From contig JAWMAR010000070.1 of assembly GCA_036785375.1 (NCBI GenBank), positions 4,650,001 to 4,714,000 on the forward strand: a stretch of 64,000 nucleotides of DNA, read 5' to 3'. The translations under genes were made by a program, and so were the position numbers. The DNA comes from Leucoraja ocellata. Taxonomy: Eukaryota. The number at the start of each line of letters is the position of its first letter. The stretch's first letter is position 1. Below the pieces are notes generated by a model. That model was not told the origin of the DNA, ran no database searches, and worked only from the letters and a program-made list of their open reading frames with translations. Positions 1,177-33,412 of this stretch are shown here, piece after piece.

Positions 1177-1230
1177 TAAATTTAACTGAGACAACTTCAA
1201 ATTCTAAAGTTTCATATTTTATCATCAGTC

Positions 1231-1329
1231 TCATTCTGGTTTCACAATCAGGTTTCCTGTTCTCTTCTTCCTCATTCTTAATACATGCCATATTTGACAG
1301 ACTGTTCAGTCTGAGGACTAAGAGCTGAG
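1231..1329 (+). promoter_or_regulatory. Putative proximal promoter of gene A with ETS/PU.1-like TTCCT cores
   Basis: The block TGGTTTCAC..TTTCCTG..TTCTTCCTCATT..AAGAGCTGA lies just upstream of the leader exon and recurs, diverged, upstream of genes B (14229) and C (29575). Confidence 0.55.
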
Positions 1330-1368
1330 CAGCAGGTCAGTGCTAACATGGTCTCCTTGGATAAAACT

Positions 1369-1405
1369 ATGTGGATTCCAATGCTGCTCATTTATTCCAT
1401 GCCCG
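1369..1405 (+). CDS. Gene A exon 1, signal peptide MWIPMLLIYSMP (in-frame upstream ATG at 1348 adds MVSLDKT)
   Basis: Hydrophobic leader ending G|GTAAGT (phase 1); joins the V exon in frame to give ...MPVSGALW. Confidence 0.85.
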
Positions 1406-4400
1406 GTAAGTAACAGCTTGATTTGGACGGTCATGTGACCAGACTCTACGGGAAGTACGAGATAATCACAAAGTGCTGGAGTAACTCAGCGGGACAGCCT
1501 GAAGAAAAGTCTCGACCCGAAATGTCACCCATACCTTCTATCCAGTGATGCTGCCTGTCCCTCTGAGTTACTACAGCATTTTGTGTCTATCTTTGGTGTA
1601 AACCAGCATCTGCAGTTCCTTCCTTTACATATGTTGGAAATACTTAGCAGGTGTGCCGAGAAAAAGAGTTACCCTTTTAGATCAGAGATCCTTTGACCTA
1701 AAACCTAACTCTATCTCTCCCCACAGATGCGCCCTGACCACCTGATTATTTTTTTGTTTTCGTGTTAGATTTTGTTAACCTCCATAGTTTTATTTTGATA
1801 TTCATTTTGGTGACCAGAATGTATCTGGGTCTTGTGTACCATTTCTGCAGTGGAGATAGTTAAATGCTTGCAGATGTAAAGATAACTGAACAATATTGGG
1901 GCGTGGATCAAGAAAGAGGAACTCAGCGGGTCAGCCAGCATCTGTGAATGTGAAGAGGACCCTGTATCGGGACTGAGCAAGGGAGGCAGGAAAGGTTGAA
2001 TCAGGATCGGCAGGTGGGCTTGTGTGGGAGGAGAACACCAGAGGGTGTGAATTACCCAAAATTGGAAAATGTAATGTTTGTACCATTGAGTTTTGAATTA
2101 TCAATCAACATCTTGTGATCTGCTTGTGTATTCTCTATGAAACACATCCTCTTCATCCAGTTCCATCTTCCTCAACCAGCCCCGACCCTCCCACTCTTTA
2201 GTACATCTATATGTTGCCAAACATCTCTGTCCCCTCTCAGTCCTGATGCAGGGTCTCGATCTGAAAGAACAACTTACACTTTTTTGCCTTCAAACCTCCA
2301 TGACCCACTGAGTCCTTCCAGTGTGCTGTTTGTTGTTCCAGATTCCAGCATCTGCAATCTCTTTTGTCTCAATATTAGAGTGTGTTCTTCCAATCTCCTC
2401 CTGTCTCCATCACTGTGCCACACATAAATCATGACCGCCAATGTATCTGACAGCACAAAGCGACTGTGAATGAAAAACAGAGACAATTACAAGTGACTGG
2501 GACAGTGGCACAGCGGTGCCTTACAGTACCAGAGATCTGGGTTCGATCCTGACTAAGGGGTCTGTCTGTATGGAGTTAGTACTTTCTCCCTGTGACCGCA
2601 TGAGTTTTCCCCCAGTCTTCTGGTTTCCTCCCACACCCCAAAGACGCATGGGTTTGTAGGTTAATTGGCCTCTATAAATAGGGAATATGGACTATGTAAA
2701 TTGTCCCTAGTGTACAAGATACTAGGTCAGCACGGACAAGTTGGGCCGAAGGGCCAGTTTCCATGCTCCATCTTAAACTAAACTAAACTAAAGTAACAGT
2801 GTCAAAGTGCAAAGGGACCCTGTCTATTCATGAAACATTGTTTTATTGCTTGCTTGCACTCACTAACAGCAGCCAAGCAATAATGCCAAAACAATTGTCT
2901 CCATTTTACAACACTTCCTCTTATTTAAAGTTCAGATATTAAATTATTTGACGTCTCAGTTCCTCTTGGGCTGTGGGTTGCTCTTGCAATGTAGCCATTT
3001 CCTTCTTGTTCTTGGACGTCAACTATGCATATTTGTCAAAGTCATCAGCATGCAATATTAATAATTTCTTGTTACCAAGTTCATTTTTTTTTCAATGTTA
3101 TCACTGATGCTCAGATGCAGGTGAAGGCCAACATTAACTGTCTTCATTCACCAGATCATTTCCGGTAATCTAGGATCATTCCTATACTAGTTTAGTTTAG
3201 TTTAGTCCAATGAAGTCCAATTATTGATCGTTCAAGGGGGTAAATAGGAGGCCAGGACTGCGCTCTAGCTAGTGAGAAGATGGGTCAGTTGCCTGAAGAC
3301 AGTTGGGAAGAAAACTATCTCTGAATCTAGAGCATTGGGTTCAAACTTCTGTCCCTCGTGCCTAATGGTAGACAGGTAAAGAAGGAGTGACTGGGATGAA
3401 ACTGCTCCATGATTATGCTGGTGGCCTTGCAAGGCAGCGTGAAGTGTAGGTGACTATTTCCTTGTTTATTGATGGGGATGATGGCAAATAAGGTTTACCC
3501 TCCATAAAACAGGCCAACGATATACGTGCATTTGGAGGATAAGGTTGGTGTAGGGATCCACAAGCCTCAGTACTCATCAATAGACAATAGGTGCAGGAGT
3601 AGGCCATTCGGCCCTTCGAGCCAGCACTGCCATGTAAGATTATTGTAAGATTATTGTAAAATTATTTTAAGATTATTAAGGGTTTGGACACGCTAGAGTC
3701 AGGAAACATGTTTCCGATGTTGGGGGAGTCCAGAACCAGGAGCCACAGTTTAAGAATAAGGGGTAAGCCATTTAGAACGGAGATGATCAGCCATGATCAC
3801 ATTGAATGGCGGTGCTGGCTCGAAGGGCCAAATGCCCCACTCCTGCACCTATTGTCTATTGTTTATTGAATGCGATCATGCTTGATCATCCCCAATCAGT
3901 ACCCCTTTCCTGCCTTCTCCCCATATCCCCTAACTATTATCTTTAAGAGCCCTATCTAGCTCTCTCTTGCAAGTTTCCAGAGAATGGGCAGAGAATTCCA
4001 CATACTCACAACTCTCTGTGTTTCCTTGTCTCCGTTCTAAATGGCTTACCCCTTATTCTTAAACTGTGGCCCCTGGTTCTGGACTGCCCCAACATCGGGA
4101 ACATGTTTCCTGTCTCTAGCGTGTCCAAACCCTTAATAATCTTACATGTTTCAATAAGATCCCCTCTCATCCTAAGTTCCAGAGTGTACAAGCCCAGCTG
4201 CTCCATTCTCTCAGCATATGACAGTTCCGCCATCCCGGGGTTTAAACTTGTAAACCTACGCTGCACTCCCTCAATAGAAAGAATCATCTATGTAGATAAA
4301 TGTAGGGGGCGTGGTGAAGTCCTCTGCCGATGAGACAAAGGTCAGCTGGATGGTTGACAGGGAGGAGAAGGCTTTTGACCCCAGGGCATATATAGATGGA

Positions 4401-5731
4401 CAAATCAGTAGGGCAGAAAAGTGGCAAAGCCAGTTTAATCCAGAGAAGTGAGAGGAATTACATTTGACAAAGAGGTCTAAATAAAGACATTAATATATGG
4501 ATGTTGAGGGAGTGTGGAGGAACAGAAGGACCTTGGAGAATATTCTCACAGCTCATTAAATGCAATATGACAATTAGTTAGTTTTAGAGATACAGCCTTG
4601 AACAGGCCCTTCGGCCCACAATGTCCAAGCCGACCAACGATTACCCGTGCACCAGTTCTATCCTACACCCTTGGGGTAATTTACAGAAGCCAATTAACTT
4701 ACAACCTACTCATGTTTGAATTGTGGGAGGAAACTAGAGCACACAGAGGAAACCCATGCGGTCACAGGGAGAACGTACAAATTATGTACAGGCAGCATCC
4801 ATAGTCAGGATCAAACCCGGGTCCTTGGCGCTGTAAGGCAGCCACTCTTCTGCTGTGCTACTGTGCTGCCCAACTAGTGTAAACAGTTAGGACCAAAGAA
4901 CTGCAGGTGCTGGTTTGTACCAAAGATAGAAACAAAGTGCTGGAGTAACTTAGAAGAGTGTCTGAAGAAGGGTCCCAATCCCGAAACATCACGCATTCTA
5001 TTTCTCCAGACATGCTGCCTGACCCGCTGAGTTACTCCAGCACCTTGTGTCTATCTTTAGTGTGAAGAGGACTCGGTGGGCCAAAGGGCGTCTTTCCATG
5101 CTGTATTTTTCAATCAATTCAATCAATAGAAAAATATCTTATGATCATTAAATTCTCCAATTTTACGTTGCACACCCCCCTACCCTCTCTCACTTTCCTG
5201 TGCACCATTTAACCCATGCCTCTTCCTCCCTTTCACCCTGTCCCCTACCAAATATACCCCTCCCTCTGTCTTTACATTTCGCTTCTCATCTCTCCTCATC
5301 TGACAACCTTTTCACCGCTTTTCACCTCCAGTCTTTGTCCACTCGTGAACCAGTCAAAATTCCCCCCTCATCTGTATCCACTTGTTGTGCTGCCTGTCCC
5401 GCTGAGTTACTCCAGCAATTTGTGTCTACCTTCCACCTGTCACTTGCCAGGCTTTATCCCATCTCCACCTCTCTTCCAGCTTTCCCCACCCTACTTTAAT
5501 CAGTCTGAAGCAGGGTCCCAACCCGACACGTCACGTGTCCATTCCCTCCAAAGATGCTGCCAGATCTGCTGAGTTACACGGGCACTTTGTGCTTGGCTCA
5601 AGGGTAAGTGAATGTCCACACACGGGTTGGACCATTCGGCCCATCGTTGATTAGGGGAAGAGTGGGTGGGACAGCAAACGCTGTGTTAAGTAGATTTGTC
5701 CTGTACATGTTCTGATGATTTTTCTTCTCAG

Positions 5732-6049
5732 TTTCAGGTGCTCTGTGGGCAAAGACACCTGTAAGAGGAGTTGTGGGAAAAACTATCACAATCGATTGTC
5801 ACTATGAAGTCTGGTACCGTTCACATACAAAATACTGGTGTCATGGGTGGACTAACTCGTGTTCAGATGTAGTGAAAACAAATGGGCAACACAGACGTGG
5901 AAGATGGTCAATCACAGATAACTCGACACAAGGAATATTTACTGTGACTGTGGAGGGTCTTCTCTCTAGAGATAAAGGATGGTACAGCTGTGGAATTGAT
6001 ACATCTGGCTTGGATCCAATGTTTAACGTTCGGGTCCAAGTATCTGACG
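5732..6049 (+). CDS. Gene A exon 2, CD300/pIgR-like Ig V domain
   Basis: TTTCTTCTCAG acceptor; ITIDC..KYWCHGWTNSC..DKGWYSCG has the canonical V-set Cys/Trp plus the extra KYWC-x6-C pair of CD300/pIgR/TREM domains; donor GACG|GTACGT. Confidence 0.93.
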
Positions 6050-6092
6050 GTACGTTTTACATTTATACCAAGCCAATTAACCTGTAAACCTG

Positions 6093-6506
6093 GGTTACAC
6101 AAAAAAGCTGGAGAAACTCAGCGGGTGCAGCAGCATCTATGGAGCGAAGGAAATAGGCAACGTTTCGGGCCGAAACCCTTCTTCAGACTGATCGGGGGCG
6201 GGGGTGGGTGGGGACATGAAAGGGAAAAGGAGGAGTAGCCAGAAGGCTGGGGGATGGGAGGAGACAGCGGGGGGGGGGGGGGCTGAGGAAGGGGAGGAGA
6301 CAGCAAGGACTAACAAAATTGGGAGAATTCGATGTTCATGCCCCCGGGGTGCAGACTCCCCAAACGGAATATGAGGTGCTGTTCCTCCAATTTCCGGTGC
6401 TGCTCGCTGTGGCCATGGAGGAGACCCAGGACAGAGAGGTCGGAGACGGAGTGGGAGGGGGAGTTGAAGTGCTGAGCCACCGGGAGGTCAGCTTGGTTCT
6501 TGAACC
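6093..6506 (-). mobile_element. Recent Penelope-like insertion specific to gene A intron 2
   Basis: 16-bp target-site duplication TTAACCTGTAAACCTG (6077-6092 and 6507-6522); the site is empty in gene B. Confidence 0.85.
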
Positions 6507-7728
6507 TTAACCTGTAAACCTGTACGTCTTTGGAGTGTGGGGGGGAAACCGAAGTTTTCAGAGAAAACCCAAGCAGGTCAGGGGGAGAATGTACAAACTC
6601 CAGACAGACAGACAGACAAGTACCCGTGGTCATGATCGAACCCGGGTCCCTGGCGCTGTAAGGCAGCAATTCTACAGCTGCGCCACCGTGCCGCCCTTAA
6701 TGATGCACCATAGGGATCAGTGCCGGGATCTTTGAGCTTTGGCCGAATTCTGTTCTTACCCCTCCTGGGAGTGTGCAGATGATGCCCCTGGATCTGGAAT
6801 AATGATGAAACGGCAAACAGGGAAATGTCTTTTATTGTGGAGGAATGAACTGCAGATGCTGTTTTAATCGAACATAGACACAAAATCTATAGATAATATA
6901 GATGCGTCACTGGGTGGCGCCGAGATGGCAGCCTCGCCAGCAGTCTGTGTGTTATTTCGACTTTTTTGTTATTTTCAGTCTGTCTAAAATGTATGTTTTA
7001 ATGTTTCTCTTTGTTTTTTTCATGTGGGGTGTGACGGGAGGGGAGGGGGGTGAGGGGAGGTGAGGTGAGGGGGGGTGAGCGGAGGGGAGGGGGGGGCGAA
7101 CCCGTTTTCAGTCACTTACCGCAACAGAGATGTGATCTTTCCCCGTGTCACGTCTCCGTCCCCTCCCCACGGACTAACAACTGGATGGATGCGGCCTTTC
7201 CTGGAGACCGGGCTGGAGCTTCGCCGCAAGGGCGACGCGGACTTTAACATTGCGGAGCTGTGATCCTTTGCTGAGAATCGCTGTGGAAGCTCTACAACCG
7301 CGGGGCTTGCGGACTTTAATACCGTGAAGCCGCGGAGAGTTTCCGTTCCGCCCCGACTCCGGAGTCTCCATCATCCCGACGAGAGGGCTTGAACATCGGG
7401 CCGTCGGCAGTGGCAGTGCTGAGGGTTCAAGGCCCCGACCACCACGGGTAAACAAAGGAGGAAGATGACTGAACCTTGTTGCCTTCCATCACAGTGAGGA
7501 ATGATGATTCCACTGTGGTGGATGTTTATGTTAAAACTATTGTGTATTGCGTTATGTTTTTAAACTTGTATGGCTGTATGATAACTCAAATACCACTGTA
7601 CCTTAATTGGTGCACGTGACAATATGTGAACTTGAACTTGAAATGTTGGAGTATCTCAGCGGGACAGGCAGCGTCTCTGGAGGGAAGGAATGGGTGACGT
7701 TTCGGCCCGAGACCCATCCTCAGACCCG

Positions 7729-8178
7729 AATGACGAAAGACTGGATAGACTTGGTTTATACTCTCTAGAATGTAGGAGATTGAGAGGGAATCTTATAGAA
7801 ACTTACAAAATTCCTAAGGGGTTGGACAGGCTAGATGCAGGAAGATTGTTCCCGATGTTAGGGAAGTCCAGGACAAGGGGTCACAGCTTAAGGATAAGGG
7901 GGAAATCCTTTAAAACCGAGATGAGAAGAACTTTTTTCACACAGAGAGTGGTGAATCTCTGGAACTCTCTGCCACAGAGGGTAGTTGAGGCCAGTTCATT
8001 GGCTATATTTAAGAGGGAGTTAGATGTGGCCCTTGTGGCTAAGGGGATCAGGGGGTATGGAGAGAAGGCAGGTACGGGATACTGAGTTGGATGATCAGCC
8101 ATGATCATATTGAATGGCGGTGCAGTCTCGAAGGGCTGAATGGCCTACTCCTGCAGCTAATTTCTATGTTTCTATTCT
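7729..8178 (+). mobile_element. CR1/HER1-like LINE 3' fragment, absent from the gene B copy
   Basis: ERLDRLGLYSLE..RTRGHSLRIRG..FFTQRVVNLWNSLP peptide and a TTTCTATG tail. Confidence 0.85.
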
Positions 8179-8282
8179 AAACTTCACCCATTCCTTCTCT
8201 CCAGAGATGCTGCCTGTCCCGCTGAGTTACTCCAGCATATTTTGTCTATCTTTAATTGTCTTTTATTTCCTTTTCTCAACAG

Positions 8283-8388
8283 AACCTGAACCTAATCCTG
8301 GATCGTCAACAACAACAACAGTAGCATTTACTTCAACTACAAAAGTAACATCCGAAAACAATGATCATGCCACCAGTTTCTCTAACAG
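8283..8388 (+). CDS. Gene A exon 3, Ser/Thr/Pro-rich stalk (EPEPNPGSSTTTTVAFTSTTKVTSENNDHATSFSN)
   Basis: Polypyrimidine-CAACAG acceptor; phase 1 in and phase 2 out (AG|GTATAA); same 106-nt length as in gene B. Confidence 0.85.
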
Positions 8389-9530
8389 GTATAATTTTCA
8401 CTTGCTCAAGTTTTGATTGGCCTTGTTTTCAATATGAGAGGTGGAGACACAAGGAACTGTTGATCCATACATAGATAGATAGACAATAGTGCAGGAGTAG
8501 GCCATTCTGCCCTTCGAGCCAGCACTGCCATTCAATGTGATCATGGTTGACCATCCACAATCAGTACCCCGTTCCTGCCTTGTCCCCATATCCCTTGATT
8601 CCGCTAGCCCTAAGAACTCTATCTAATTCTCTTTTGAGTGTATCCAGTGATTCAGCCTGCACTGCCTTCTGAGGCAAAGAATTCCCCAGATTCGCAACTC
8701 TCTGGGTGAAAAGGTTTTCCTCGTCTCAGTTCTAAATGGCCTACCCCTTATTCTTAAACTGTGGCCCCTGATTCTGGACACCCCCAACATCGGGAACATG
8801 TTTCCTGCATCTCACGTGTCCCTTAATAATCCCTTAATAATTTTATATGTGTCTATAAGATACCCTCTCATCCTTCTAAATTCCAGTGAATACAAGCCCA
8901 GTCGCTCCATTCTTTCATCATATGACAGTCCCGCCATCCCGGGAATTAAACTGGCTGGATGCTGGATCCTTGAGTACAACACAAAGTACTGGAGTAACTC
9001 TAGGTTGTCGAGGGTGGCATGGTGGTGCAGCGGTAGAGTTGAAGTTTGAAAACGCACACCTGCAGAGTCAGGGACATTTTCTTCCCAACGGTTATCAGGC
9101 AACTGAATCATCCCCTCACCAGCGATCCTGACCTCCCATCTACCTCATTGGAGATCTTCCAACTTTGTTTCATCAGACTTGCATCTGATCACATAGGATT
9201 TAAGGCACAGAAAAGATCAACTGAACTGATCCCATGCTGGTGTTTACATACCACTCGTCACTTCTCCCATCTTTTCTTATCTAACTTTATCAACGCTAGA
9301 CACAAAATGCTGGAGTAACTCAGCTAGTCAGGCAGCATCTCTGAAGAACATGGATAGGTGAGGTTTCAGGTTGAGATCCTGGATGGTGGAATTTCCCAGC
9401 TGAACTCCCTGGGCTCTGTTGCTGTACCCTGCTCCATGCAGAGATTTCACAACAATCAGGCTATGAATGTTTCCAACACGAACTAGTCTGTTTCCTCCTA
9501 CTGATTCTGTATCTTTCCCCTTTTGCTCAG

Positions 9531-9621
9531 TTACATGATATGGAATGTGGGACGCTGGCTGTACTTCGCTCTGCTTGGGATCTGCAGCATCTCAGTCTCA
9601 TTGTTCACAAGTATAAGGAAG
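9531..9621 (+). CDS. Gene A exon 4, transmembrane exon with Arg (SYMIWNVGRWLYFALLGICSISVSLFTSIRK)
   Basis: TTTTGCTCAG acceptor with phase 2 matching the stalk; AAG|GTATGT donor; hydrophobic helix containing N-x-x-R. Confidence 0.85.
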
Positions 9622-10397
9622 GTATGTTTTGCGGAGATCATCAGAATCGCTGAATGCTTCCAAATGCTGTCCATTAATACCTTCAAACATGCTGATAAAA
9701 TAAAACAAACGAAAAGCGTTTAGATAAAGTACTTCACAAATATAGGCCAAACCAATGCTCTACGAAGATGATATCAATTGGTCTTGACAAGATGTGTGTG
9801 TGCAGAATGAACTGAAGTGTTTGACGTAGATGTTGTAGTGTCATTGAATCAGAGAAATACAACTGGGAAACAGGCCCTTTGACCCACTGTAACAAGCGCA
9901 GACCATCTTATCTGAACCCAATTCCCTCCCCTCTACTTTCAGTTTGAAGAAGGGTCCCGACCTGAAATGTCACCCATCCTTTTTCTCCAGAGATCGTGCC
10001 AGACTCGCTGGGTTACTCCAGCACTTTGTGCCGATCAGGCCATTGATCACCCGTACGCATTAGTTTGATGTTATCCCATTCTCTCATCCCAACTCCCAAC
10101 ACACTAGGGGAAATTCACACTGGCCAATTAACCTGGAAACCCACAAGTCTTTGGGAGGTGGGAGGAAACCGGAGCTCGCGGAGGAAACCCACATGGACAC
10201 AGCGAGAACATGCAAACTCCACACAGATAGCATCAAAGTCAAAATCCAAGCAAATTCTTGGACGTTGGGAGGCAGCAGCTCTATCAGCTGCATCACTGTG
10301 CCAATTGGAACAAGAATTCTGTTGTTAGTGGCCTTGTGAAATAAAGCACAATTCCCGGAGTCAATTATCTGATGACTTCAAACATTTTTTTTTGCAG

Positions 10398-10433
10398 GGA
10401 CCTAATGAACCGAAACCTCACAGCTTGCCGTAG
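10398..10433 (+). CDS. Gene A terminal exon, short cytoplasmic tail GPNEPKPHSLP*
   Basis: TTTTTTTGCAG acceptor, phase 0; the peptide is identical in gene C despite synonymous changes; AATAAA at 10800-10805. Confidence 0.75.
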   Translation, partial: GPNEPKPHSLP

Positions 10434-11541
10434 AAGGCAGAATGAAGATCCACTGGTGATAGTGACTGTGAAACAACTCTCCAACAAGACCAAATGATCA
10501 TTATTATTTTGAATGAATTAATTAATTAATACTTCATTGTCACGTGTGACAAGTCACAGTGAAATTCTTTGCTTGCTAACCCAAGGTATGCAAATAGTCG
10601 CACATAAAGGGCATTGATAAAGTGTTTTTCATTTTGCTTTCATAATAGACTGCACAGAATTAATGCTTCTTCTGCTAAAATTATTAACTTAGTTTACACA
10701 ATATTCACTCAGTAAAGGTGCCATTTAAACAATGTTGCTAGCCTTTATAGCAATGACTTATTATTTTGTGTTGTGTAGCATGACATTGCAGTTATGTGGA
10801 ATAAATTGTATTCAATCCTGGAAATGCCTCATGGTTTTAACTGTGAAGAATATTTAGAAGAGGGAAACTATAAGCTATGACATCCCATCAGATCAAATGT
10901 TCTGGAACTACTTTTTCTCATGAGAACATCACTGTAATATACTTTGCTGAGCTGTTTTCAAGTCAAGTCTGTCATTCTTATGTGCACGTATGGTGAGGTG
11001 CAGATACAATGAAAATCGCACTTGTGGCAACATCACATACACGTAGACACACAAAAATATAAATGATACATAGGGCGGCACGGGTGTATAGCGGTGGTGT
11101 TGCTGCCTTCATTTCAGCGCCAGGGACGCGGGTTCGATACGGGTGCTGTCTGTACGGAGTTTGTATGTTCTCCCCATGACCAAGTGGGTTTTCTCTGAGA
11201 TCTTTGGTTTCTTCCCACACTCAAAGACGTGCAGGTTTTTAGGTTAATTGGCTTTGGTAAAATTGTAAATTGACCCTAGTGTATGCAGGATAGTGCTGGT
11301 GTGCGGAGGAGATAGCTGGTTGGCGTCAACTAGGTGGGCCAAAGGTCCTGTTTCCATGCTGTATCTCTAAACTAAACTCAACTCAACTAAGACGTCCAAT
11401 TCCACTCAAGGAAAGTCACCGTATCTCTCAAACTAATTGGCACTTTACTCAAAGCAATGGGTTCCATCTGACAATCTTGTTCTCTTTATTCACTGCATGT
11501 GAAAACAGCTGAGACTTAATTTTATTTCCTTGCCTCAACAG

Positions 11542-11812
11542 AACTTGAATAAACTTATGAAGGAATGATGAATGAATGATGAATGAATAGGTTTATGAAT
11601 GAATAGGTTTATTGACCAAGTATTCACATACAAGGAATTTGCCTTGGTGCTCCGCACGCAATTGCAATGTGACACACAGTGACATTATGAATGACACCTA
11701 AAACATTAAACATTAACAATAACATATATTTTTATAACAGAACCAATGACAACCACACTATCTCCAATTACAAAATTGATATCAACAGTATTCAAAACAA
11801 ATATAGTGCAAG
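11542..11812 (+). pseudogene. Orphan stalk-like exon relic downstream of gene A (copy at about 41607-41870 downstream of gene C)
   Basis: The acceptor TATTTCCTTGCCTCAACAG resembles the stalk acceptors; the relic is interrupted by a (GAAT)n-type insertion; 11741-11812 reads EPMTTTLSPITKLISTVFKTNIVQ with an AAG|GTATAT donor. Confidence 0.4.
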
Positions 11813-14366
11813 GTATATTCTTCTCATAATTTTTTTTACGCACTGGAACTGAATCCATGTCGAGGACATTTGGTCGATTTTGTATTGTTTTGTATTGTAT
11901 TGTTAAACGCAAGCGTTTAGTGTGCTTGATTGTCATATCACGTCAACTAAGATGCCCCATCTACTCTAGTTCCTCCTGCCAGCGTTTGGTCCATCTCCTA
12001 CTAAACTAGTCCAATTCATGTAACTGTCCAAATGCCTTTAAAATGTTTTTGTAGCACCTGCCTCAACTACCTCATCAGTTAGCTCATTCCATACACCCAC
12101 AACTCACTGTGTAAAAAAATGATGCCCCTCAGGATCCTATGAAATATTTCCCCTTTCACCTGAAGCCTTGTCCCCTGGGTCTTGATTCCCCTGCTCTAGG
12201 TAAGATACTTGTTTCCCTTGTTACCCTTGTTTCCCTTTCCCCTAACTTTGTCTGAAGAAAGGTCTTGACTCAAAACATCACCTATTTCTTTACTCCAAAG
12301 ATGCTGCCTCACCCAATGAATAACTCTAGGTTTTTGAGTCAATCTTCGGTTTTAACGAGCATCTGCAGTTCCTTCATAGAAACATAGAAACATAGCATAA
12401 GGTGCAATAATAATTTAAAATATAAATAATACCAGGATCTGGTAACGGGGGGTATAAAATACATTAAAAAAAAAAAACACGGTTGGTATATCCTTTCTTG
12501 CGAGTTTTGTGTTACAATAGAGCGATTGTTTTTCCTTTTCTTTCTTTTCTTTTTAGGGTCTTATTTCCTTTCTTTACTTCCTTCTCTAACTTCTTCCCTA
12601 AGGGGCTTTCTTTTCCCAACACTTTCCTGCACCTTCACGATTCTTGCTCACTTTCCTTACTTCTTTTATTTCTATCTATTTTTAAAAATAACAAAAAAAA
12701 ATTAAAAAAATTAAAAATTGTTTTAAAAAAAAAAGAAAAGAAACATAGAAAATAGGTGCAGGAGTAGGCCATTCGGCCCTTCGAGCCTGCACCGCCATTC
12801 AATATGATCATGGCTGATCATCCAACTCAGTATCCTGTGCCTGCCATCTCTCCATACCCCATGATATCTTTAGCCACAAGGGCCACATCTAACTCCCTTT
12901 TAAATATAGCCAATGAACTGGCCTCAACAACCTCCTGTGGCACAGAATTCCAGAGATTCACCACTCTTTGTCACCTGCCCGCTGTTCCTGACGCTAAAGC
13001 CTTGGGATCGTTGCCCTTCGTGTTGGCATGGAGCGGGAGGGGAATATTGTGCTGTTTGGTCACCCCCTGCTAATCCCAGGGACAGGGAGACACAGCGGCT
13101 TTTGAGACTGGTGGGCAATCACTTCCAAAGTGGCTGCCCACAGTCAGTACACCTGTCCTACACTTGTCTCCCGCACTAAGATCATCCCGCAGAGAATGAT
13201 CCCAGCCTAACCCAAGAGCCATGTCACCCCAGACAGATTAAAGACGCCCGCCCCCTCTCACAGCGCCAGAGACCTAGATTCAATCCCGACTATGGGTGCT
13301 GTCCGTGCAGAGTTTGTACATTCTCCCTGCGACTGCATGGGTTTCCTCCGGGTGCTCCGGTTTCCTCCCACATCCCAAAGACGTACAGGTTTGTTGGTTG
13401 AATCCTTTGGTAAGAAAAATTGTAAACTGTTTCTAGAGTGTAGAATGGTGCTAGTGTGCGGGGTCATCGCTGGTCGGTGCGGACTTAGTGGGACAAAGGG
13501 CCTCTTTCCACAATTATCTCCAAAAGTAAAAAATAAAAAAATAAAAGGCTGGACTATATACATCAGTCAATGAAAATTGGATTACTTTTATTTTACACTC
13601 CAGACGTACAGGTATGTAGGTAAATTGGCTTGGTAAAAGTAAAAAAACTGTCCCTAGTGTGTGTAGGATAGTGTTAATGTGCAAGGATTGCTGATCGGCA
13701 TGGACTCGGTGGGCCGAAGGACCTGTTTACTAAACTAATCAGAACTAAATTTAACTGACTAAACAGAACTAAATCTAACTTTTATTAAACACCTTCGCTC
13801 GGTCCGCAAGAACCTACCTGACCTCCCGTGGCTCAACACTTCAACTCTCCCTCCCATTCCCATTCCGACCTCTCTGTCCTGGGTCTCCTCCATTGCCAGA
13901 GTGAGCAACACCGGAAATTGGAGGAACAGCACCTCATATTTCGCCTGGGGAGTCTGCATCCTGCGGGCATGAACATCGAATTCTTCCAATTTTGTCAGCC
14001 CTTGCTGTCTCCTCCCCTTCCCTCAGCCCTCGGGCTTCTCCTCCTCCTTTTTCCTTCCTTCTCCCCGCCACCCCCTATCAGTCTGAAGAAGGGTTTCGGC
14101 CCGAAACGTTGCCTATTTCCTTCGCTCCATAGATGCTGCTGCAGCCGCTGAGTTTCTCCACCATTTTTGTGTACCTTAAATTTAACTGAGACAACTTCAA
14201 ATTCTAAAGTTTCAGATTTTATCATGTCTCATTCTGGTTTCACAATCAGGTTTCCTGTTCCCTTCTTCCTCATTCTTAATACATGCCATATTTGTCAGAC
14301 CGTTCAGTCTGAGGACTAAGAACTGATCAGCAGGTCAGTGCTAACATGGTCTCCTTGGATAAAACT

Positions 14367-14403
14367 ATGTGGATTCCAATGCTGCTCATTTATTCCCTGC
14401 CCG
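14367..14403 (+). CDS. Gene B exon 1, signal peptide MWIPMLLIYSLP (upstream in-frame ATG at 14346)
   Basis: Copy of the gene A leader with a G|GTAAGT donor. Confidence 0.85.
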
Positions 14404-18058: not shown

Positions 18059-18376
18059 TTTCAGGTGCTCTGACGGCAAATACACCTGTAAGAGGAGTTG
18101 TGGGGAAAAATATCACAATCGATTGTTACTATGTAGCACGGTACCGTTCACACACAAAATACTGGTGTCATGGGTGGACTCGCTCGTGTTCAGTTGTAGT
18201 GAAAACAAATGGGCAACACAGACGTGGAAGAGCGTCAATCACAGATAACCCGGCACAAGGAATATTTACTGTGACTGTGGAGGATTTTCTCTCTAGCGAT
18301 ACAGGATGGTACAGCTGTGGAATTGATACATCTGGCTTGGATCCATTGTTTAACGTTCAGGTCCAAGTATCTGACG
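18059..18376 (+). CDS. Gene B exon 2, CD300/pIgR-like Ig V domain
   Basis: 318 nt with the same splice sites as the gene A V exon; KYWCHGWTRSC and DTGWYSCG motifs. Confidence 0.93.
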
Positions 18377-19717
18377 GTACGTTTTACATTTATACCAAGC
18401 CAATTAACCTGTAAACCTGTACGTCTTTGGAGTGTGGGGGGAAACCGACGTTTTCAGAGAAACCCCACGCAGGTCACAGGGAGAATGTACAAACTCCAGA
18501 CAGACAGACAGACAAGTACCCGTGGTCATGATCGAACCCGGGTCCCTGGCGCTGTAAGGCAGCAATTCTACAACTGCGCCACCGTGCCGCCCTTAATGAT
18601 GCACCATAGGGATCAGTGCCGGGATCTTTGCTGTTTGGCCGAATTCTGTTCTTACCCCTCCTGGGAGTGTGCAGATGATGCCCCTGGATCTTGAATAATG
18701 ATGAAACGGCAAACAGGGAAATGTCTTTTATTGTGTTGGAAAGAACTGCAGATGCTGTTTTAATCGAACATAGACACACAATCTATAGAGCAGATAGATG
18801 CGTCACTGGGTGGCGCCGAGATGGCAGCCTCGCCAGCAGCCTGTGTGTTAGTTCGACTTTTTTGTTATTTTCAGTCTGTCTAAAATGTATGTTTTAATGT
18901 TTCTCTGTGTTTTTTAATGTGGGGGGTGAGGGGAGGGGGGGGTGAGGGGAGGGGGGGGGGGGGGGTGAGGGGAGGGGGGGGGGGGGGTGAGGGGAGGCCG
19001 AAACCGTTTTCAGTCACTTACCGCAACAGAGATGTGATCTTTCCCCGTGTCACGTCTCCGTCCCCTCCCCGCGGACTAACAAGTGGATGGATGCGGCCTT
19101 TCCTGGAGACCGGGCTGGATCTTCGCCGCAAGGGCGACGCGGACTTTAACATTGCGGAGCTGTGATCCTTTGCTGAGGATCGCTGTGGAAGCTCCCCGAC
19201 CGCGGGGCTTGTGGACTTTAATACCGTGAAGCCGCGGAGTGTTTCCGTTCCGCCCCGACGCCGGAGTCTCCATCATCCCGACGAGAGGGCTTGAACATCG
19301 GGCCGTCGGCAGTGGCAGTGCTGAGGGTTCAAGGCCCCGACCACCACGGGTAAACAAAGGAGGAAGATGACTGAACCTTGTTGCCTTCCATCACAGTGAG
19401 GAATGATGATTCCACTGTGGTGGATGTTTATGTTAAAACTATTGTGTATTGCATTATGTTTTTAAACTGGTATGGCTGTATGATAACTCAAATACCACTG
19501 TACCTTAATTGGTGCACGTGACAATATGCGAACATGAACTTGAAATGTTGGAGTATCTCAGCGGGACAGGCAGACAGGGTGATGTGTCGGCCCGAGACCC
19601 ATCCTCAGACCCAAAACTTCACCCATTCCTTCTCTCCAGAGATGCTGCCTGTCCCGCTGAGTTACTCCAGCATATTTTGTCTATCTTTAATTGTCTTTTA
19701 TTTCCTTTTCTCAACAG

Positions 19718-19823
19718 AACCTGAACCTAATCCTGGATCGTCAACAACAACAACAGTAGCATTTACTTCAACTACAAAAGTAACATCCGAAAACAATGAT
19801 CGTGCGACCAGTTCCTCTAACAG
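19718..19823 (+). CDS. Gene B exon 3, mucin-like stalk
   Basis: Near-identical to the gene A stalk exon; CAACAG acceptor and AG|GTATAA donor. Confidence 0.85.
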
Positions 19824-20869
19824 GTATAATTTTCACTTGCTTAAGTTTTGATTGGCCTTGCTTTTCAATATGAGAGGTGGAGACACAAGGAACTGTTGAT
19901 CCATACATAGATACATAGATGGATAGACAATAGTGCAGGAGAAGTCCATTCTGCCCTTCGAACCAGCACCGCCATTCAATGTGATCATGGTTGACCATCC
20001 ACAATCAGTACCCCGTTCCTGCCTTGTCCCCATATCCCATGATTCCGCTAGCACTAAGAACTATGTCTAATTATCTTTTGAATGTATCCAGTGAATCGGC
20101 CTGCACTGCCTTACGAGGTAAAGAATTCCCCAGATTCACAACTCCCTGGGTGAAAAGTTTTCCTCAACTCAGTTCTAAATGGCCCACCCCTTATTCTTAA
20201 ACTGTGGCCCCTGGTTCTGGACTTCCACAACATCGGGAACATGTTTCCTGCATCTCGCGTGTCCCATCCCTTAATAATTTTATATGTGTCTATAAGATAT
20301 CCTCTCATCCTTCTAAATTCCAGTGAATACAAGCCCAGTCGCTACATTCTTTCATCATATGACAGTCCCGCCATCCCGGGAATTAACCTGGCTGGATGCT
20401 GGATCCTTGAGTAGAACACAAAGTACTGTAGTAACTCTAGGTTGTCGAGGGTGGCATGGTGGTGCAGCGGTAGAGTCGCTGCCTTACAATGCCAGAGAGT
20501 CATAATCAAGGACCACTCACCCCAGTCACTCCCTCTTCTTCCCCTCTCCCATCAGGGACATTTTCTTCCCAGCAGTTACCAGGCAACTGAACCATCCCCT
20601 CACCAGCTAGAGAGCGACCCTGACCTCCCATCTACCTCATTGGAGACGTTCCAACTATCTTTAATCAGACTTTATTGGACTCTATCTTACACTAAACATT
20701 CTACCCTTTATCACAAATCTATATGCTGTGACAGCTTGATTGTAATCGTGTCTAGTCTTTTCGCTGACTGGATAACACACAACCAAAAGCTTTTCACTGA
20801 ACCACGATGCACGTGACTATAATAAACTAAACTAAATTAACGAAACAACAGTTAAACTTGGCAGGACAT

Positions 20870-21716
20870 TGACACCCACCACTAGCCACATCTCCCCATC
20901 TCCACCCCTTTCTGCTTTCTGCAGAGACCGTTCCCTCCGCATCTCCCTGGTTAACTCATCCCTTCCCACCAAACTACCGCCTCCCCAAGTACTTTCACCT
21001 GCAACTGCAGGAGATGCAACACCTGTCCCTATACCTCGCCCCTCGAATCCGTCCAAGGACCCTGACAGTCTTTTCAGGTGAGGTAGGGGTTCACTTGCAG
21101 CTCCTCCAACCTCATCTACAGTTGCAGGTGTGGACTCCTATATATCGGCAAGAATACGCACAGGCTTGGCGATCGTTTCACTGATCTCCTTCGCTCAGTC
21201 CGCTTAAGCCTAGCTGACCGTCCGGTGGTGAACACTTTAACTCCCCCTCCCATTCCCACGCTTACATTTCTGTCCTGGGCCTCCTCCTTTATCAGCGAAA
21301 ATTAGGGGTAACAGCACCTCGTATTGGGCAGCTTCCACCCCAGCTGTATGAATATTGACTTCTCCAACTATAAGTATCCCTTGATTTCCCTGACTCCATC
21401 CCATTCCCTTTCCAGTACTCCGACCAGTCTGACTCTGCCCAATTATATTTTATCTTTGTTTATTTTGTTGTTACCGTCTCCCAGCTAACAATGATCTATT
21501 CTACATTTTCCTTGATCTCCACCCTCTTTGTTTCATTTTCACACCTTACACTTCCTTATCTCTGTATCTCCTTCTCCCCTGAAGGAGGGTCTCAATCCCA
21601 AATGTCATCCATTCCTTCTCTCCAGAGATGCTGCCTCTCCCGCCGAGTTACTCCAGCATTTTGTGTCTATCTTCTTCGGTTTAAACCAGCATCTGCAGTT
21701 CCTTCCTACACTTATT
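20870..21716 (+). mobile_element. Degenerate Penelope-like element in the gene B stalk-TM intron
   Basis: Decayed GIY-YIG region similar to 31918-32378, followed by the terminal repeat. Confidence 0.65.
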
Positions 21717-22424
21717 GACTGTCCACTGGTTTTGAACAAGGGGTGTTTCCTTTGTAAATCTGTAAGCTGTGAGCATTTGTAAACCAATCGGCAGATATAT
21801 CGACCACGGACAATGCCACTGGCCAGATCTCACACACAATTAGTTTAGTTTTACTTTAGTTTAGAGATACAGCATGGTAACAAATCCTTCGTTCCTCCGA
21901 GTCCACGCTGTCCGTCGATCACCCTTTTATATTAGATCTATGTGATCAAGCTTTTTCATCCACTCGCTACAAATTAAGGACAATTTACCAAGGCCAATTA
22001 ACCCACAAACCCGCACGTCTTTGTGATGTGGGAGGAAACCGGAGCACCCGGAGAAAACCCACTTCATCACAGGGAGAACATGCAAACTCCTTACAGACAG
22101 CACCTGTAGTCTGGATTGAACCTGGGTCTCTGGCGCTGTAAGGCATCAACTCCATGCTGTGCTACTGTTGGGTTGAGTTGGGTTTATTCTTTATCCAACA
22201 TCACAATCATTGGTCGTTATCGCACTGCTGTTTGTGGAACTTGCTGTGGGCAGATTGGCTTTGGTGTTTACCACATTACAGCAATGTGTGCACTCCATTG
22301 ACTGGGCTTGACTTATCCTGAGCTCATGAAAGATACCCTGCAGATGTTAGACTTTTGTTCTTTACCAAAGGATAGGAATCAATGATGAAACAAGAGTAAC
22401 CTTTTTGCTTTCTCTGTCCCATAG

Positions 22425-22510
22425 ACCCATAATTTACCTCAGTATTGCTGGAGTTCTTCTCGTGGTGATATTTGCTGGTCTACTTTGGTGCCTAATGTGT
22501 AGACAAAGGA
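22425..22510 (+). CDS. Gene B exon 4, uncharged transmembrane exon (RPIIYLSIAGVLLVVIFAGLLWCLMCRQR)
   Basis: TCTCTGTCCCATAG acceptor, phase 2 in; A|GTGAGT donor; hydrophobic run followed by a basic stop-transfer sequence. Confidence 0.88.
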
Positions 22511-23371
22511 GTGAGTTTCTATGTTTCCTTCATCCTTTCATGATGTATGTTATCATTTCCTGCAGAGAGGGAGAGAGATACAGCACTGAAACAGGCCCTT
22601 TATCAACCATCTCTTTATTCCAGTCCTACAATAATCTTATCCAGTCTGAAGAAGGGTCCCGGCCTGAAATGTCACCCACCCTTTTCGTCCAGAGATGCTG
22701 CCTGATCCATTGAGTTACTACTTTGTATCTATCTTTGATGTAAACTAGCATTCTTAACAGTCATTCCTAACTGTCACTGTTTGTCGTTGTCACTTGCGGG
22801 GGCGGAGCACCAAGGCAAATTCCTTGTATGTGAATACTTGGCCAATAAACTTATTCATTAATTCATTAATCTGCAGGTCCTTTCTACACACTAATTTTAT
22901 CCAACTTTGTTCTCTCCATGTTGTTATCAATTCCCCCAAGATTCTACCCCTCGCCTACACACTAGGGGCTATTTACAGTGGGAATTAACCTACAGGCGTG
23001 CATGTCTTTAGGATGTAGGGGGAAACGGAGCACCCAGAGGTAACCCACCTAGTTGGGCTTGTGGTTCTCATGAATAAAAGTGTAGGAAGGAACTGCAGAT
23101 GCTGGTTATACACCTAAGACAGATTGAAGATGCTGGAGTAAATCAGCAAGATAGGCATCTCTGGAGAGAACGGTCTGAAGAAGGGTCTCAACCTGAAACG
23201 CCATCCATTTCTTCTCTCCGGAGATGCTGCCTGTCCCACTAAGTTACTCCAGCATTTTGTGTCCATCTTCGGTTTAAACCAGCATCTGCAGTTCCTCCCT
23301 ACTCTATATGCATCAAGATGGCTGGTTAAAAATGTCCCTGACATGTTCAATGTTAACATTGTGTTTTCCAG

Positions 23372-23418
23372 AATCAGAAGGGAACAAACCTCCCAGAGCA
23401 AATAACAATGAAATGCAG
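23372..23418 (+). CDS. Gene B exon 5, membrane-proximal cytoplasmic exon (KSEGNKPPRANNNEMQ)
   Basis: TTTTCCAG acceptor and CAG|GTAAAG donor; phase 1 in and phase 0 out exactly bridges exon 4 and exon 6. Confidence 0.75.
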
Positions 23419-24013
23419 GTAAAGACGGCAAAGTATGAATTCTCCGTGGATTGAGAACTTACAAAATTCTGTAATCCAACCTCACTAATCAAGTCACTAA
23501 TCTGCTTCAATGGTTCTATGGTTCCTTTATCATCAAACGCATCAAGATGCATCAAGGTTATTTTATGCATACAGATCAGACGATTATTTCAAAGGAACAG
23601 GGTTCTAATTTTGGATGATCAGCCATGATCACATACACAGCGTTCCATACACCCACCACACTTTGTGTAGAAAGTTACCCCTTGGGTTCCTATTAAATCT
23701 TTCCCCCCCTCATCATAAACCTATATCATCTGGTTCTCGATTCTTCTACTCTAGACAAAAGGCTCTGTGCGTCTACCCGATCTTTTCCTCTCATGATTTT
23801 GTACACCTCTATCAGATCACCCCTCATCCTCCTGCACTCCAAGCGTCCTGGCCTGCTCAACCTCTCTCTATAATTCATGCCCACGAGTCTGGGCAACATC
23901 CTTGCAAATCTTCTCCGCACCCTTTCCAACTTGACAGCATCTTTCCTATGACATGGTGACTAAAACTGAACACAAATCATCAGACAAACCTTGGTTCCTC
24001 TTTTGTTTTTCAG

Positions 24014-24274
24014 GGTTTGCCAGCAGGAAAACGGAGCATCGTTTATGCAACACTGTCAGACATTCGAAGCAACAAGGAAGCTGCCCATTGTTCTAATCAA
24101 TATCAAACTGTGTATGCAGAAGTGCAAGTTCAAAGCAAATCGACAGGGTCTCACTCCAGTACTGGGGAGGACAATGTCACCTATTCAGAAGTTACATCTC
24201 AAAGCGTCAGCCAGATTGCCCGTCAGAAAGCTCCTTCTCCTGTGCAGAGTATTTATGCCACTGTGACTTCTTAG
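24014..24274 (+). CDS. Gene B terminal exon, inhibitory tail with IVYATL, TVYAEV, VTYSEV and SIYATV
   Basis: TTTTTCAG acceptor, phase 0; ORF 24017-24274 carries four ITIM/ITSM-consensus tyrosine motifs, then TAG. Confidence 0.9.
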   Translation, partial: GLPAGKRSIVYATLSDIRSNKEAAHCSNQYQTVYAEVQVQSKSTGSHSSTGEDNVTYSEVTSQSVSQIARQKAPSPVQSIYATVTS

Positions 24275-29677: not shown

Positions 29678-29715
29678 ACAATAAACGTCCCAGCATGGGG
29701 TCTGCATCTAAAACG

Positions 29716-33273: not shown

Positions 33274-33412
33274 ACGTATCTCCTCAAAAACCTGACACAA
33301 AAAAGCGGAGATTTTTACAATTTCCGTAGCGATTTATCTTAGGAGTTCAGAAATCCATTCCTTGGTCAATTATTTCCCCAGATTTTGAATAAATCTCTCT
33401 CCCCACCCCTCT

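What the first reader, a model, noticed from the sequence alone, without database searches (positions are those of the whole stretch)
1348..24274. Adjacent activating/inhibitory receptor pair with near-identical ectodomains in a cartilaginous-fish CD300/pIgR-like cluster
Seen: genes A and B share the leader, a 318-nt V exon and a 106-nt stalk exon. A ends in an Arg-containing TM and an 11-aa tyrosine-free terminal exon; B ends in a neutral TM and a four-tyrosine tail. Established: this is the paired-receptor layout of mammalian CD300, LILR, KIR and Siglec-5/14, and skate MDIRs are CD300/TREM/pIgR-related. Inference: A is an activating counter-receptor or decoy for ligands that engage inhibitory B.
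Basis: partly seen in the sequence, partly recalled or inferred. Interest (0 to 1): 0.85.

Follow-up and report, generated by a model that had tools for sequence, protein, structure and literature searches.

The report
Paired skate MDIR immune receptor genes
Two neighbouring skate immune-receptor genes share one outer sensing part, but one carries an inhibitory tail and the other a short tail with a charged membrane anchor; this is a fresh example of a receptor pairing already known in this gene family.

Summary
Gene A (1348-10433) and gene B (14346-24274) lie in a 94-97% identical duplicated block that carries the leader, a 318-nt pIgR/CD300-like V exon and a 106-nt stalk exon.

- **Gene A:** it continues with an Arg-bearing TM exon and an 11-aa Tyr-free exon.
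- **Gene B:** it continues with a neutral TM exon and a tail with ITIM/ITSM motifs.
- **Corrections:** B needs a further 47-nt exon (23372-23418) to keep the tail in frame. The tail has five tyrosines, four of them in conserved ITIM/ITSM motifs. The V domains are 82.5% identical, not near-identical, and diverge faster than the flanking intron.
- **Origin of A:** A is a chimera. It is B-like up to 9180 and, from 9182, like a third gene C (29695-40491).
- **Family:** the genes belong to the skate MDIR family. They match Rostroraja MDIR2 and MDIR5, a family described as having activating and inhibitory forms.
- **Expression:** a 191-aa protein from a 1,028-nt public contig has exactly A's exon order. 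No read or contig shown was specific to A itself.

The scan noted similar pairs on other pieces of this genome; none has been followed up. Verdict: a real feature and a new member of a known kind. The activating role is inferred.

The parts
243..9180 (+). B-like duplicated block of gene A: promoter, leader, V exon, stalk exon and part of intron 3
   Evidence: Self-BLASTN aligns it with 13257-20476 at 94-97%. A weaker continuation, 9068-9180 with 20552-20672, is 85% identical.
1348..1405 (+). Gene A leader exon (58 nt, ends in phase 1)
   Evidence: ATG at 1348 and donor gtaagt. 18 of 19 residues match B.
5732..6049 (+). Gene A V exon (318 nt; alternative acceptor at 5738)
   Evidence: Pfam V-set, E 4.1e-8. 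PDB matches to pIgR, CD300f and CD300a. Splice sites.
8283..8388 (+). Gene A Ser/Thr-rich stalk exon (106 nt, ends in phase 2)
   Evidence: 32 of 34 residues match B.
9181..9181 (+). Breakpoint where A changes from B-like to C-like
   Evidence: A-B homology ends at 9180 and A-C homology starts at 9182. No repeat is shared between B 20300-21200 and C 38400-39600.
9182..12375 (+). C-like duplicated block of gene A: TM exon, terminal exon and 3' flank
   Evidence: 90-96% identical to 39244-42500. DNA contig 9182-9320 of run X15 has no differences, although A and C differ at 6 sites there.
9531..9621 (+). Gene A TM exon with Arg (91 nt, phase 2 in, phase 0 out)
   Evidence: 30 of 30 residues match gene C and Amblyraja P0037. 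The Arg lies 2 residues before the best hydrophobic 19-mer.
10398..10433 (+). Gene A terminal exon (11 codons plus stop, no Tyr)
   Evidence: The peptide is identical in C, P0037 and P0155.
14346..14403 (+). Gene B leader exon
18059..18376 (+). Gene B V exon (318 nt)
   Evidence: Pfam V-set, E 1.4e-9..
19718..19823 (+). Gene B stalk exon (106 nt)
22425..22510 (+). Gene B uncharged TM exon (86 nt, ends in phase 1)
   Evidence: It aligns with the TM of Rhinoraja P0002.
23372..23418 (+). Gene B small cytoplasmic exon (47 nt); it restores the frame for the tail and is not in the finding
   Evidence: 13 of 16 residues match P0002. Sequence and splice sites.
24014..24274 (+). Gene B tail exon: 86 codons plus stop, five Tyr, three ITIM-type motifs and one ITSM-type motif
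   Evidence: The four motif tyrosines are each kept in 5 or 6 of 6 aligned elasmobranch tails.
29695..40491 (+). Gene C, the donor type of A's 3' module. Exons: leader 29695-29752, V 34928-35248, second Ig 36973-37281, stalk 38280-38382, Arg TM 39593-39683, terminal 40456-40491.
   Evidence: The exon lengths add up to 305 codons, the same as Amblyraja P0037.

Best explanation
A, B and C are members of the skate MDIR family, single-pass Ig receptors with a pIgR/CD300-like V domain.

B is an inhibitory receptor. It has a V domain, a Ser/Thr-rich stalk, an uncharged TM and a tail with three ITIM-type motifs and one ITSM-type motif. After ligand binding and tyrosine phosphorylation, these motifs would recruit SH2 phosphatases (inferred).

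A arose when a copy of B's 5' part (promoter to stalk exon) was joined, at a sharp non-homologous breakpoint at 9181, to a copy of the 3' part of a C-type gene (Arg TM exon plus 11-codon exon). The stalk exons of both parents end in phase 2, so the fusion reads through (shown).

A would therefore show a B-type ectodomain on a short-tailed receptor. Its boundary Arg would couple it to an acidic-TM, ITAM-bearing adaptor, making it the activating counterpart of B (inferred).

After the duplication the two V exons diverged mainly by amino-acid changes. The pair therefore probably no longer binds identically (divergence shown, consequence inferred).
For: - **Gene structure.** All splice sites are canonical and all phases fit.
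- **Duplication blocks and breakpoint.**
- **Family.** The V exon hits Pfam V-set and the PDB entries for pIgR, CD300f and CD300a. Rostroraja MDIR2 aligns with the V exons at 69-76% and with C's second Ig at 72%. MDIR5 carries the same W-x-V-G-R-W TM.
- **B's model.** Rhinoraja P0002 residues 711-870 align with the TM exon (52%), with 13 of 16 residues of the 47-nt exon, and with the tail exon (72%). The four motif tyrosines are kept in sharks, rays and skates.
- **A's model.** P0155 is 191 aa and comes from a 1,028-nt contig, too short to hold introns. It runs leader, V, the same stalk, TM and terminal peptide, with the junction exactly as predicted. Amblyraja P0037 ends in the identical TM plus terminal peptide. 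A contig of run X14 joins the TM exon to the terminal exon.
- **Either/or pattern in the family.** 14 of 162 proteins have the W-x-[VI]-x-R-W TM, and 11 of those 14 have no ITIM or ITSM after it.
- **V divergence.** 24 differences in 318 nt of exon against 11 in 939 nt of flanking intron, Fisher p 6e-8. 21 changes are nonsynonymous and 3 synonymous. Nonsynonymous density against all non-coding DNA gives p 7e-5.
- **Arg position.** A TM with Arg at its N-terminal end (the NxxR type) binds FcR-gamma in mammals and Xenopus (passages of PMC2413239).
Against: - **No A-specific RNA was seen.** The X14 contig carries gene C's letters at 10535 and 10602. X14 has depth 0 in the bins 5700-5898 and 8287-8485. 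The two raw RNA runs, which carry another species label and were read at about 5 in 100, give depth near 0-1 in the 5700-5898 and 9481-9679 bins. Only 15 of 5,171 joints were displayed, so a rare A joint could be hidden.
- **The Arg is at the edge of the TM.** It lies 2 residues outside the best hydrophobic 19-mer. The Asn of NxxR is not kept in homologues, which have K, S, E, D or T there.
- **The adaptor may be missing.** A 2014 survey reported no FcR-gamma homologue in cartilaginous fish (passages of PMC4016189).
- **Earlier classification of MDIR5.** As I recall the abstract of Cannon et al. 2006 (not held), MDIR5, which has this TM, was listed as lacking activating or inhibitory motifs.
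- **dN/dS alone is not significant.** The value is 2.16, Fisher p 0.31. Gene conversion from paralogues could also explain the V divergence.
- **Possible soluble form.** The Leucoraja model P0029 ends by reading through the stalk donor, so such a form is possible.
Confidence: 0.6

Rival explanations
1. A is a young, functionless by-product of segmental duplication. It is an intact-looking chimeric copy that is not expressed, or only barely, and plays no part in signalling.
For: - No read or contig shown was specific to A.
- The duplication is recent: non-coding divergence from B is 3.28%. Open frames may therefore simply not have decayed yet.
Against: - All five exons and eight splice sites are intact.
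- The V exon has gained 21 nonsynonymous changes and no stop.
- The promoter block is copied along with the gene, with 3.86% divergence.
- The same architecture is transcribed in some skate, as shown by P0155.
Confidence: 0.2
2. A is expressed but does not activate. It is either a short-tailed membrane decoy without an adaptor, the Arg being only a juxtamembrane residue, or a soluble form made by reading through the stalk donor.
For: - The Arg lies outside the best hydrophobic core.
- The stalk donor is weak (gtataa). Read-through gives nine codons and a stop in both A and B, the same ending as the Leucoraja model P0029.
- No FcR-gamma homologue was reported in sharks in 2014.
Against: - The R-W pair is kept in all 14 such TMs, from catshark to skates. 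That is unexpected for an idle flank on the outer side of the membrane.
- Arg at the N-terminal end of the TM is exactly where FcR-gamma-coupled receptors carry it.
- P0155 and P0037 splice on to the TM exon.
Confidence: 0.15
3. The A chimera is an assembly error that joins a B-like 5' copy and a C-like 3' copy from elsewhere in the cluster.
For: - The junction at 9181 lies beside highly repeated DNA: depth is in the millions in bins 8884-9082.
- None of the pieces shown bridges 9181.
- The only piece shown on the B-like side (8224-8366) cannot tell A from B.
Against: - Both halves are distinct copies, 3-5% from B and from C, and not collapsed duplicates.
- The DNA contigs 9182-9320 and 9500-9861 carry A's own letters.
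- The same exon combination exists as a transcript, P0155.
Confidence: 0.05

Closest known systems
Modular domain immune-type receptors (MDIR) of the clearnose skate, Rostroraja (Raja) eglanteria: MDIR2 and MDIR5
   Same: - The V domain is the same: 64-76% identity to the window's V exons.
- The second Ig of gene C is the same type: 72% to MDIR2.
- MDIR2 has an uncharged TM and a tail rich in ITIMs, like B.
- MDIR5 has the same W-x-V-G-R-W TM and a short tail, like A and C.
- The family is described as multigenic with activating and inhibitory forms (passages of PMC3031540).
   Different: - A and B are single-V forms with a Ser/Thr-rich stalk instead of a second Ig domain.
- The adjacency of the two genes, the chimeric origin with a sharp breakpoint, and the fast V divergence are seen only here.
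- I could not read the original MDIR paper, so I cannot say whether such pairs were described there.
Mammalian CD300 (CMRF35-like) family: CD300a and CD300f (inhibitory) against CD300b, c, d and e (adaptor-coupled)
   Same: - A single pIgR-like V domain. PDB matches: CD300f E 2.4e-18, CD300a E 1.2e-15.
- A stalk, a TM and either an ITIM tail or a short tail with a charged TM residue (the latter is established knowledge, recalled).
- NCBI names the skate relatives 'CMRF35-like molecule'.
   Different: - Orthology is not shown, and the expansions are independent in each lineage.
- As I recall, mammalian activating CD300 members mostly carry Lys or Glu deeper in the TM. Here it is an Arg at the outer edge.
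NxxR-type TM receptors that bind FcR-gamma: LILRA2, PIR-A, NKp46, GPVI, OSCAR, Fc-alpha-R, Xenopus XFL
   Same: - Arg at the N-terminal end of the TM. In A and C an Asn sits three residues before it.
- A short tail.
- Paired with forms that have an uncharged TM and ITIMs (passages of PMC2413239).
   Different: - The ectodomains are unrelated (C2-type Ig).
- The Asn is not kept in homologues of other elasmobranchs.
- Homology of the TM exons was not tested.
- Binding to an adaptor was not tested.
Siglec-5/Siglec-14 and similar young paired receptors
   Same: Neighbouring genes share 5' exons, with one inhibitory tail and one charged TM (established knowledge, recalled).
   Different: In those pairs, as I recall, gene conversion keeps the ligand-binding domain almost identical. 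Here the V exon is the most diverged part of the shared block: 7.55% against 1.17% in the flanking intron.

Membership tests
MDIR family (skate modular domain immune-type receptors) | Ig ectodomains homologous to named MDIR proteins | tested here: met
   - MDIR2 (P0182): 69% to the A and B V exons, 76% to C's V, 72% to C's second Ig.
- MDIR5 (P0165): 58-70% to the V exons.
- The names are those given by UniRef.
MDIR family (skate modular domain immune-type receptors) | Modular signalling ends: either an uncharged TM with an ITIM tail, or a positively charged TM with a short tail | tested here: met
   - B's TM and tail align with MDIR2's; the tail alignment is weak, 27% at E 4e-5.
- A's and C's TM aligns with MDIR5's.
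- 11 of 14 R-W TMs have no ITIM after them.
pIgR/CD300/TREM-type V-set domain | V-set fold closest in sequence to pIgR domains and CD300 | tested here: met
   - Pfam V-set above its cut-off: 33.8 and 38.6 bits against 26.
- 36 distinct PDB sequences at E up to 0.01, led by pIgR, CD300f, CD300a and CLM-6. TREM2, TLT-1 and NKp44 are weaker.
pIgR/CD300/TREM-type V-set domain | Four cysteines (the canonical pair plus an extra pair after the K-Y-W-C motif) | tested here: met
   The A and B V translations each have four Cys, including the K-Y-W-C motif and the W-Y-S-C motif. That this pattern defines the group is recalled, not tested here.
Paired activating/inhibitory receptors (functional class) | Closely related ectodomains on genes with opposite signalling ends | tested here: met
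   The leader, V and stalk exons are shared. V is 82.5% identical. The ends are opposite in type.
Paired activating/inhibitory receptors (functional class) | Both members expressed | tested here: inconclusive
   - No A-specific or B-specific RNA was seen in the 4 runs laid.
- An A-type spliced sequence exists in a contig of unknown origin.
Paired activating/inhibitory receptors (functional class) | The charged-TM member binds an ITAM adaptor, and the ITIM member recruits phosphatases | not testable with these tools
   This needs co-expression and binding assays.
NxxR TM class (FcR-gamma-coupled) | A conserved N-x-x-R at the N-terminal end of the TM | tested here: inconclusive
   - N-V-G-R is present in A, C, P0037 and P0155.
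- In the other 10 R-W TMs the Asn position holds K, S, E, D, T or G, while the Arg is invariant.
- The Arg lies 2 residues before the hydrophobic core.

The most novel reading that the evidence does not exclude
The locus catches the birth of an activating receptor. A single non-homologous join at 9181 put an inhibitory gene's promoter and ligand-binding exons onto a ready-made Arg-TM/short-tail module that shares the same splice phase. The new pair's V domains then diverged under selection, the arms-race pattern seen in mammalian paired receptors.

If the R-W TM kept across sharks, rays and skates does bind an ITAM adaptor, then elasmobranchs must have such an adaptor. A 2014 survey did not find FcR-gamma there.
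Probability: 0.35. Interest if true: 0.55.

Novelty: new member of a known kind. Interest (0 to 1): 0.4.

Why it matters
Activating and inhibitory receptors that share an ectodomain are thought to arise again and again under pressure from pathogens. Most worked examples are mammalian. This pair comes from a lineage that split from ours over 400 million years ago. Its origin can be read directly from the DNA: two duplicated blocks, one sharp breakpoint, matching splice phases, and a binding domain that changed faster than the intron next to it.

It offers a simple test system for two questions. How are such pairs born? Which adaptor do cartilaginous fish use with Arg-TM receptors? It does not reveal a new kind of system: the MDIR family and its two signalling types are already described.

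Tried and rejected
- **RNA support for gene A.** Repeats took almost all the depth and the displayed joints: 15 of 5,171 joints were shown. The only informative piece was a contig joining the TM exon to the terminal exon, and it proved to be C-type. The raw RNA runs carry another species label, and only about 5 in 100 of their reads were read.
- **Origin of the A-type contig.** The cluster look-up gave no accession or name, so its species is unknown.
- **dN/dS as proof of selection.** The ratio of 2.16 is not significant on its own (p 0.31). I rely instead on the comparison with intron and other non-coding DNA. Gene conversion remains an alternative.
- **Unequal crossing-over at a shared repeat.** Rejected as the origin of A: no repeat is shared at the two parental sites.
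- **Direct splice from B's TM exon to the tail exon.** Rejected: it shifts the frame and ends after about 27 codons without a tyrosine.
- **Adaptor genes in cartilaginous fish.** Two paper searches returned nothing relevant. One paper reports absence as of 2014.
- **The MDIR paper and a review by the same group.** Neither is held. What I say of the 2006 abstract is recalled.
- **Supplements.** I asked for no supplementary files. Those of the papers cited may list further MDIR-like genes.

Full report
**What is there**

Self-BLASTN of the window shows two sets of duplicated blocks.
- 243-9039 matches 13257-20476 in four pieces of 94.3-97.3% identity.
- 9182-11887 and 11939-12375 match 39244-41943 and 42084-42500, at 96.1% and 89.9%.

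Reading the sequence and translating each exon on its own gives three genes on the + strand.

| Gene | Leader | V | Second Ig | Stalk | TM | Small cytoplasmic exon | Last exon |
|---|---|---|---|---|---|---|---|
| A | 1348-1405 | 5732-6049 | none | 8283-8388 | 9531-9621 (Arg) | none | 10398-10433 |
| B | 14346-14403 | 18059-18376 | none | 19718-19823 | 22425-22510 (uncharged) | 23372-23418 | 24014-24274 |
| C | 29695-29752 | 34928-35248 | 36973-37281 | 38280-38382 | 39593-39683 (Arg) | none | 40456-40491 |

Every acceptor is AG behind a pyrimidine tract, and every donor starts with GT. The exon lengths add up to 202 codons for A, 291 for B and 305 for C.

All searches were exon by exon or used proteins that the tools returned.

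**Check of the observation**

The leader, the 318-nt V exon and the 106-nt stalk exon are shared by A and B as described. So are A's Arg TM exon and its 11-codon Tyr-free last exon, and B's uncharged TM exon and its tyrosine tail. Three points need correcting.
- **A missing exon in B.** B's TM exon ends in phase 1 while the tail exon starts in phase 0, so a direct splice would shift the frame to a short tail without tyrosine. The frame is restored by a 47-nt exon at 23372-23418. I found it because the C-terminal 160 residues of Rhinoraja longicauda XP_078277136 (P0002) align in turn with B's TM exon, with this exon (13 of 16 residues) and with the tail exon (72%).
- **Five tyrosines, not four.** Four sit in ITIM-type or ITSM-type contexts. 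Each of those four is kept in 5 or 6 of the 6 elasmobranch tails aligned. The fifth is not kept.
- **The V domains are not near-identical.** 24 of 318 nt and 18 of 103 residues differ.

**What family it is**

- The V exons pass Pfam's V-set threshold.
- Among solved structures they match pIgR domains, CD300f (E 2.4e-18), CD300a (1.2e-15) and CLM-6. TREM2, TLT-1 and NKp44 match more weakly. In all, 36 distinct sequences match at E up to 0.01.
- A HMMER scan of 1.84 billion representatives gave 2,471 proteins at E up to 0.001 and 109 at E up to 1e-30.
- The closest named proteins are NCBI models from skates, rays and sharks. They are called CMRF35-like molecule or polymeric immunoglobulin receptor-like.
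- The list also contains Modular domain immune-type receptor 2 and 5 of Rostroraja eglanteria.
  - MDIR2 aligns with the A and B V exons at 69%, with C's V at 76% and with C's second Ig at 72%. It has an uncharged TM and an ITIM tail.
  - MDIR5 ends in the same W-x-V-G-R-W TM and a short tail.
- Passages of PMC3031540 describe MDIRs of skate and zebrafish as multigenic families of activating and inhibitory receptors related to CD300, TREM, FCAR and pIgR.

The genes are therefore MDIR family members, and the two signalling types are already known in that family. The original paper (Cannon et al. 2006) is not held. As I recall its abstract, MDIR1 has a positively charged TM residue, MDIR2 and MDIR3 have ITIMs, and MDIR4 and MDIR5 were said to lack such motifs.

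**Origin of A**

A's similarity to B runs to 9180, and its similarity to C starts at 9182. B's and C's parental sites share no repeat, so the join is non-homologous and sharp. The stalk exons of B and C both end in phase 2, and both TM exons accept phase 2. This is why the fusion stays in frame. Non-coding divergence from B is 3.28% (220 differences against 6,484 matches). Divergence from C is about 4%. The two halves are therefore of similar age.

The same swapping is seen across the family.
- Leucoraja P0181 and MDIR2 carry a C-like ectodomain on an ITIM tail. The window's C and Amblyraja P0037 carry it on the Arg TM.
- The A/B-type stalk sits on an ITIM tail in Rhinoraja P0002 and on the Arg TM in P0155.

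**V-exon divergence**

The V exon differs at 7.55% of its positions, while the 939 nt of intron just before it differ at 1.17% (Fisher p 6e-8). 21 of the 24 changes alter the protein. The density of nonsynonymous changes exceeds that of all aligned non-coding DNA (p 7e-5); the density of synonymous changes does not (p 0.51). dN/dS is 2.16, which is not significant alone (p 0.31).

A's V is closer to a Leucoraja protein (87.5%) than to its neighbour B (82.5%). Conversion from other paralogues is therefore a live alternative to selection. One change removes an N-I-T glycosylation sequon in A that B keeps.

**Expression**

The run search listed DNA-like holders for one organism label and RNA raw reads only for another label. 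I laid 5700-11650 on four runs at 90% likeness.
- **Repeats dominated.** Only 15 of 5,171 joints were displayed.
- **One informative contig.** A 401-nt contig of run X14 (guessed to be RNA; same organism label as the best DNA holders) lies on 9530-9623 with no differences and continues at 10400-10665. This supports the splice from the TM exon to the terminal exon. It is therefore a C-type transcript.
- **No sign of A or B in X14.** The run has depth 0 in the bins 5700-5898 and 8287-8485.
- **Raw RNA runs.** Depth is 0-0.8 in the 5700-5898 bin and 0-1.3 in the 9481-9679 bin.
- **DNA contigs of X15.** They match A exactly at 9182-9320, where A and C differ at 6 sites. They match with one difference at 9500-9861. 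A's 3' half is therefore real DNA. No piece shown bridges 9181.

Independent support for A's exon order comes from P0155. It is a 191-aa protein predicted on a 1,028-nt Logan contig, which is too short for the 9 kb of introns. It reads part of the leader, a V domain (80% to A, 81% to B), the same stalk (33 of 35 residues as in A), the split Ser codon, the identical TM exon peptide and the identical terminal peptide. It may come from a paralogue or from another skate.

**Mechanism**

- **B (likely).** It has an uncharged, strongly hydrophobic TM (mean hydropathy 2.79) and four conserved ITIM/ITSM tyrosines. It should act as an inhibitory receptor that recruits SH2 phosphatases. This is inferred from established knowledge of such motifs.
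- **A (plausible).** Its short tail of 11 residues beyond the TM exon has no tyrosine.
  - In favour: the Arg with its following Trp is kept in all 14 such TMs among 162 family proteins, from catshark to skates. 11 of those 14 have no ITIM after the TM. The three exceptions are a fused two-gene model, one 52-residue tail with a single match, and one false match inside the TM. Arg at the N-terminal end of the TM is the place used by receptors that bind FcR-gamma, as shown by experiment for Xenopus XFL (passages of PMC2413239).
  - Against: the Arg is two residues outside the best hydrophobic 19-mer. The Asn of the NxxR motif is not kept in other species. A 2014 survey found no FcR-gamma in sharks (passages of PMC4016189).
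  - My two searches for later reports of adaptors in cartilaginous fish found nothing relevant.

**Verdict**

The feature is real and was read correctly in outline. It is a new member of a known kind: MDIR genes with the two known signalling ends, here as neighbours with a legible chimeric origin and a fast-evolving V exon. The activating role of A, its expression in this species and any shared ligand remain inferences.

First-stage notes on this window made the chimera, V-divergence and NxxR points separately. I checked the first two myself and the third in part. Notes on other pieces of this genome describe similar candidate pairs: 8 were shown of 254 that fitted the look-up, and none has been followed up.

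Noticed in passing
window 29695-40491: Gene C is a complete two-Ig receptor (V plus a C2-like domain) with the Arg TM and the 11-codon terminal exon. Its exon lengths add up to 305 codons, the same as Amblyraja radiata XP_032898776. A masked N run (33046-33273) lies in its first intron and was left alone.
   Followed up: partly
window 8389-8415 and 19824-19850: Reading through the weak stalk donor (gtataa) gives nine codons and a stop in both A and B. This is the same ending as the Leucoraja erinacea model XP_055510915, so a soluble isoform is possible.
   Followed up: partly
window 5780-5788 against 18107-18115: B, like several homologues, has an N-I-T glycosylation sequon near the start of the V domain. 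A has T-I-T there and has lost it.
   Followed up: no
window 43133-46780 and 45983-49651: A tandem repeat of about 2.85 kb, 97.9% identical, with a third partial copy (43133-43932 against 48857-49651). It lies downstream of gene C and its content was not examined.
   Followed up: no
window 7690-8290, 8490-8950 and other places: Fragments of a very abundant interspersed repeat that carries a LINE-like open frame. They take depths of thousands in the RNA runs and millions in the DNA run, and they swamp read-based tests in this locus.
   Followed up: no
proteins P0011 (Narcine) and P0002 (Rhinoraja): Automatic gene models in other species fuse neighbouring family members. P0011 has an internal Arg TM followed by further domains, an uncharged TM and ITIMs. 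Activating and inhibitory genes may therefore lie side by side in those species too.
   Followed up: no
protein P0165 (Rostroraja MDIR5): MDIR5 carries the conserved W-x-V-G-R-W TM. As I recall the 2006 abstract, MDIR5 was listed as lacking activating or inhibitory motifs. If so, the class of Arg-TM members in this family may have been under-counted.
   Followed up: partly
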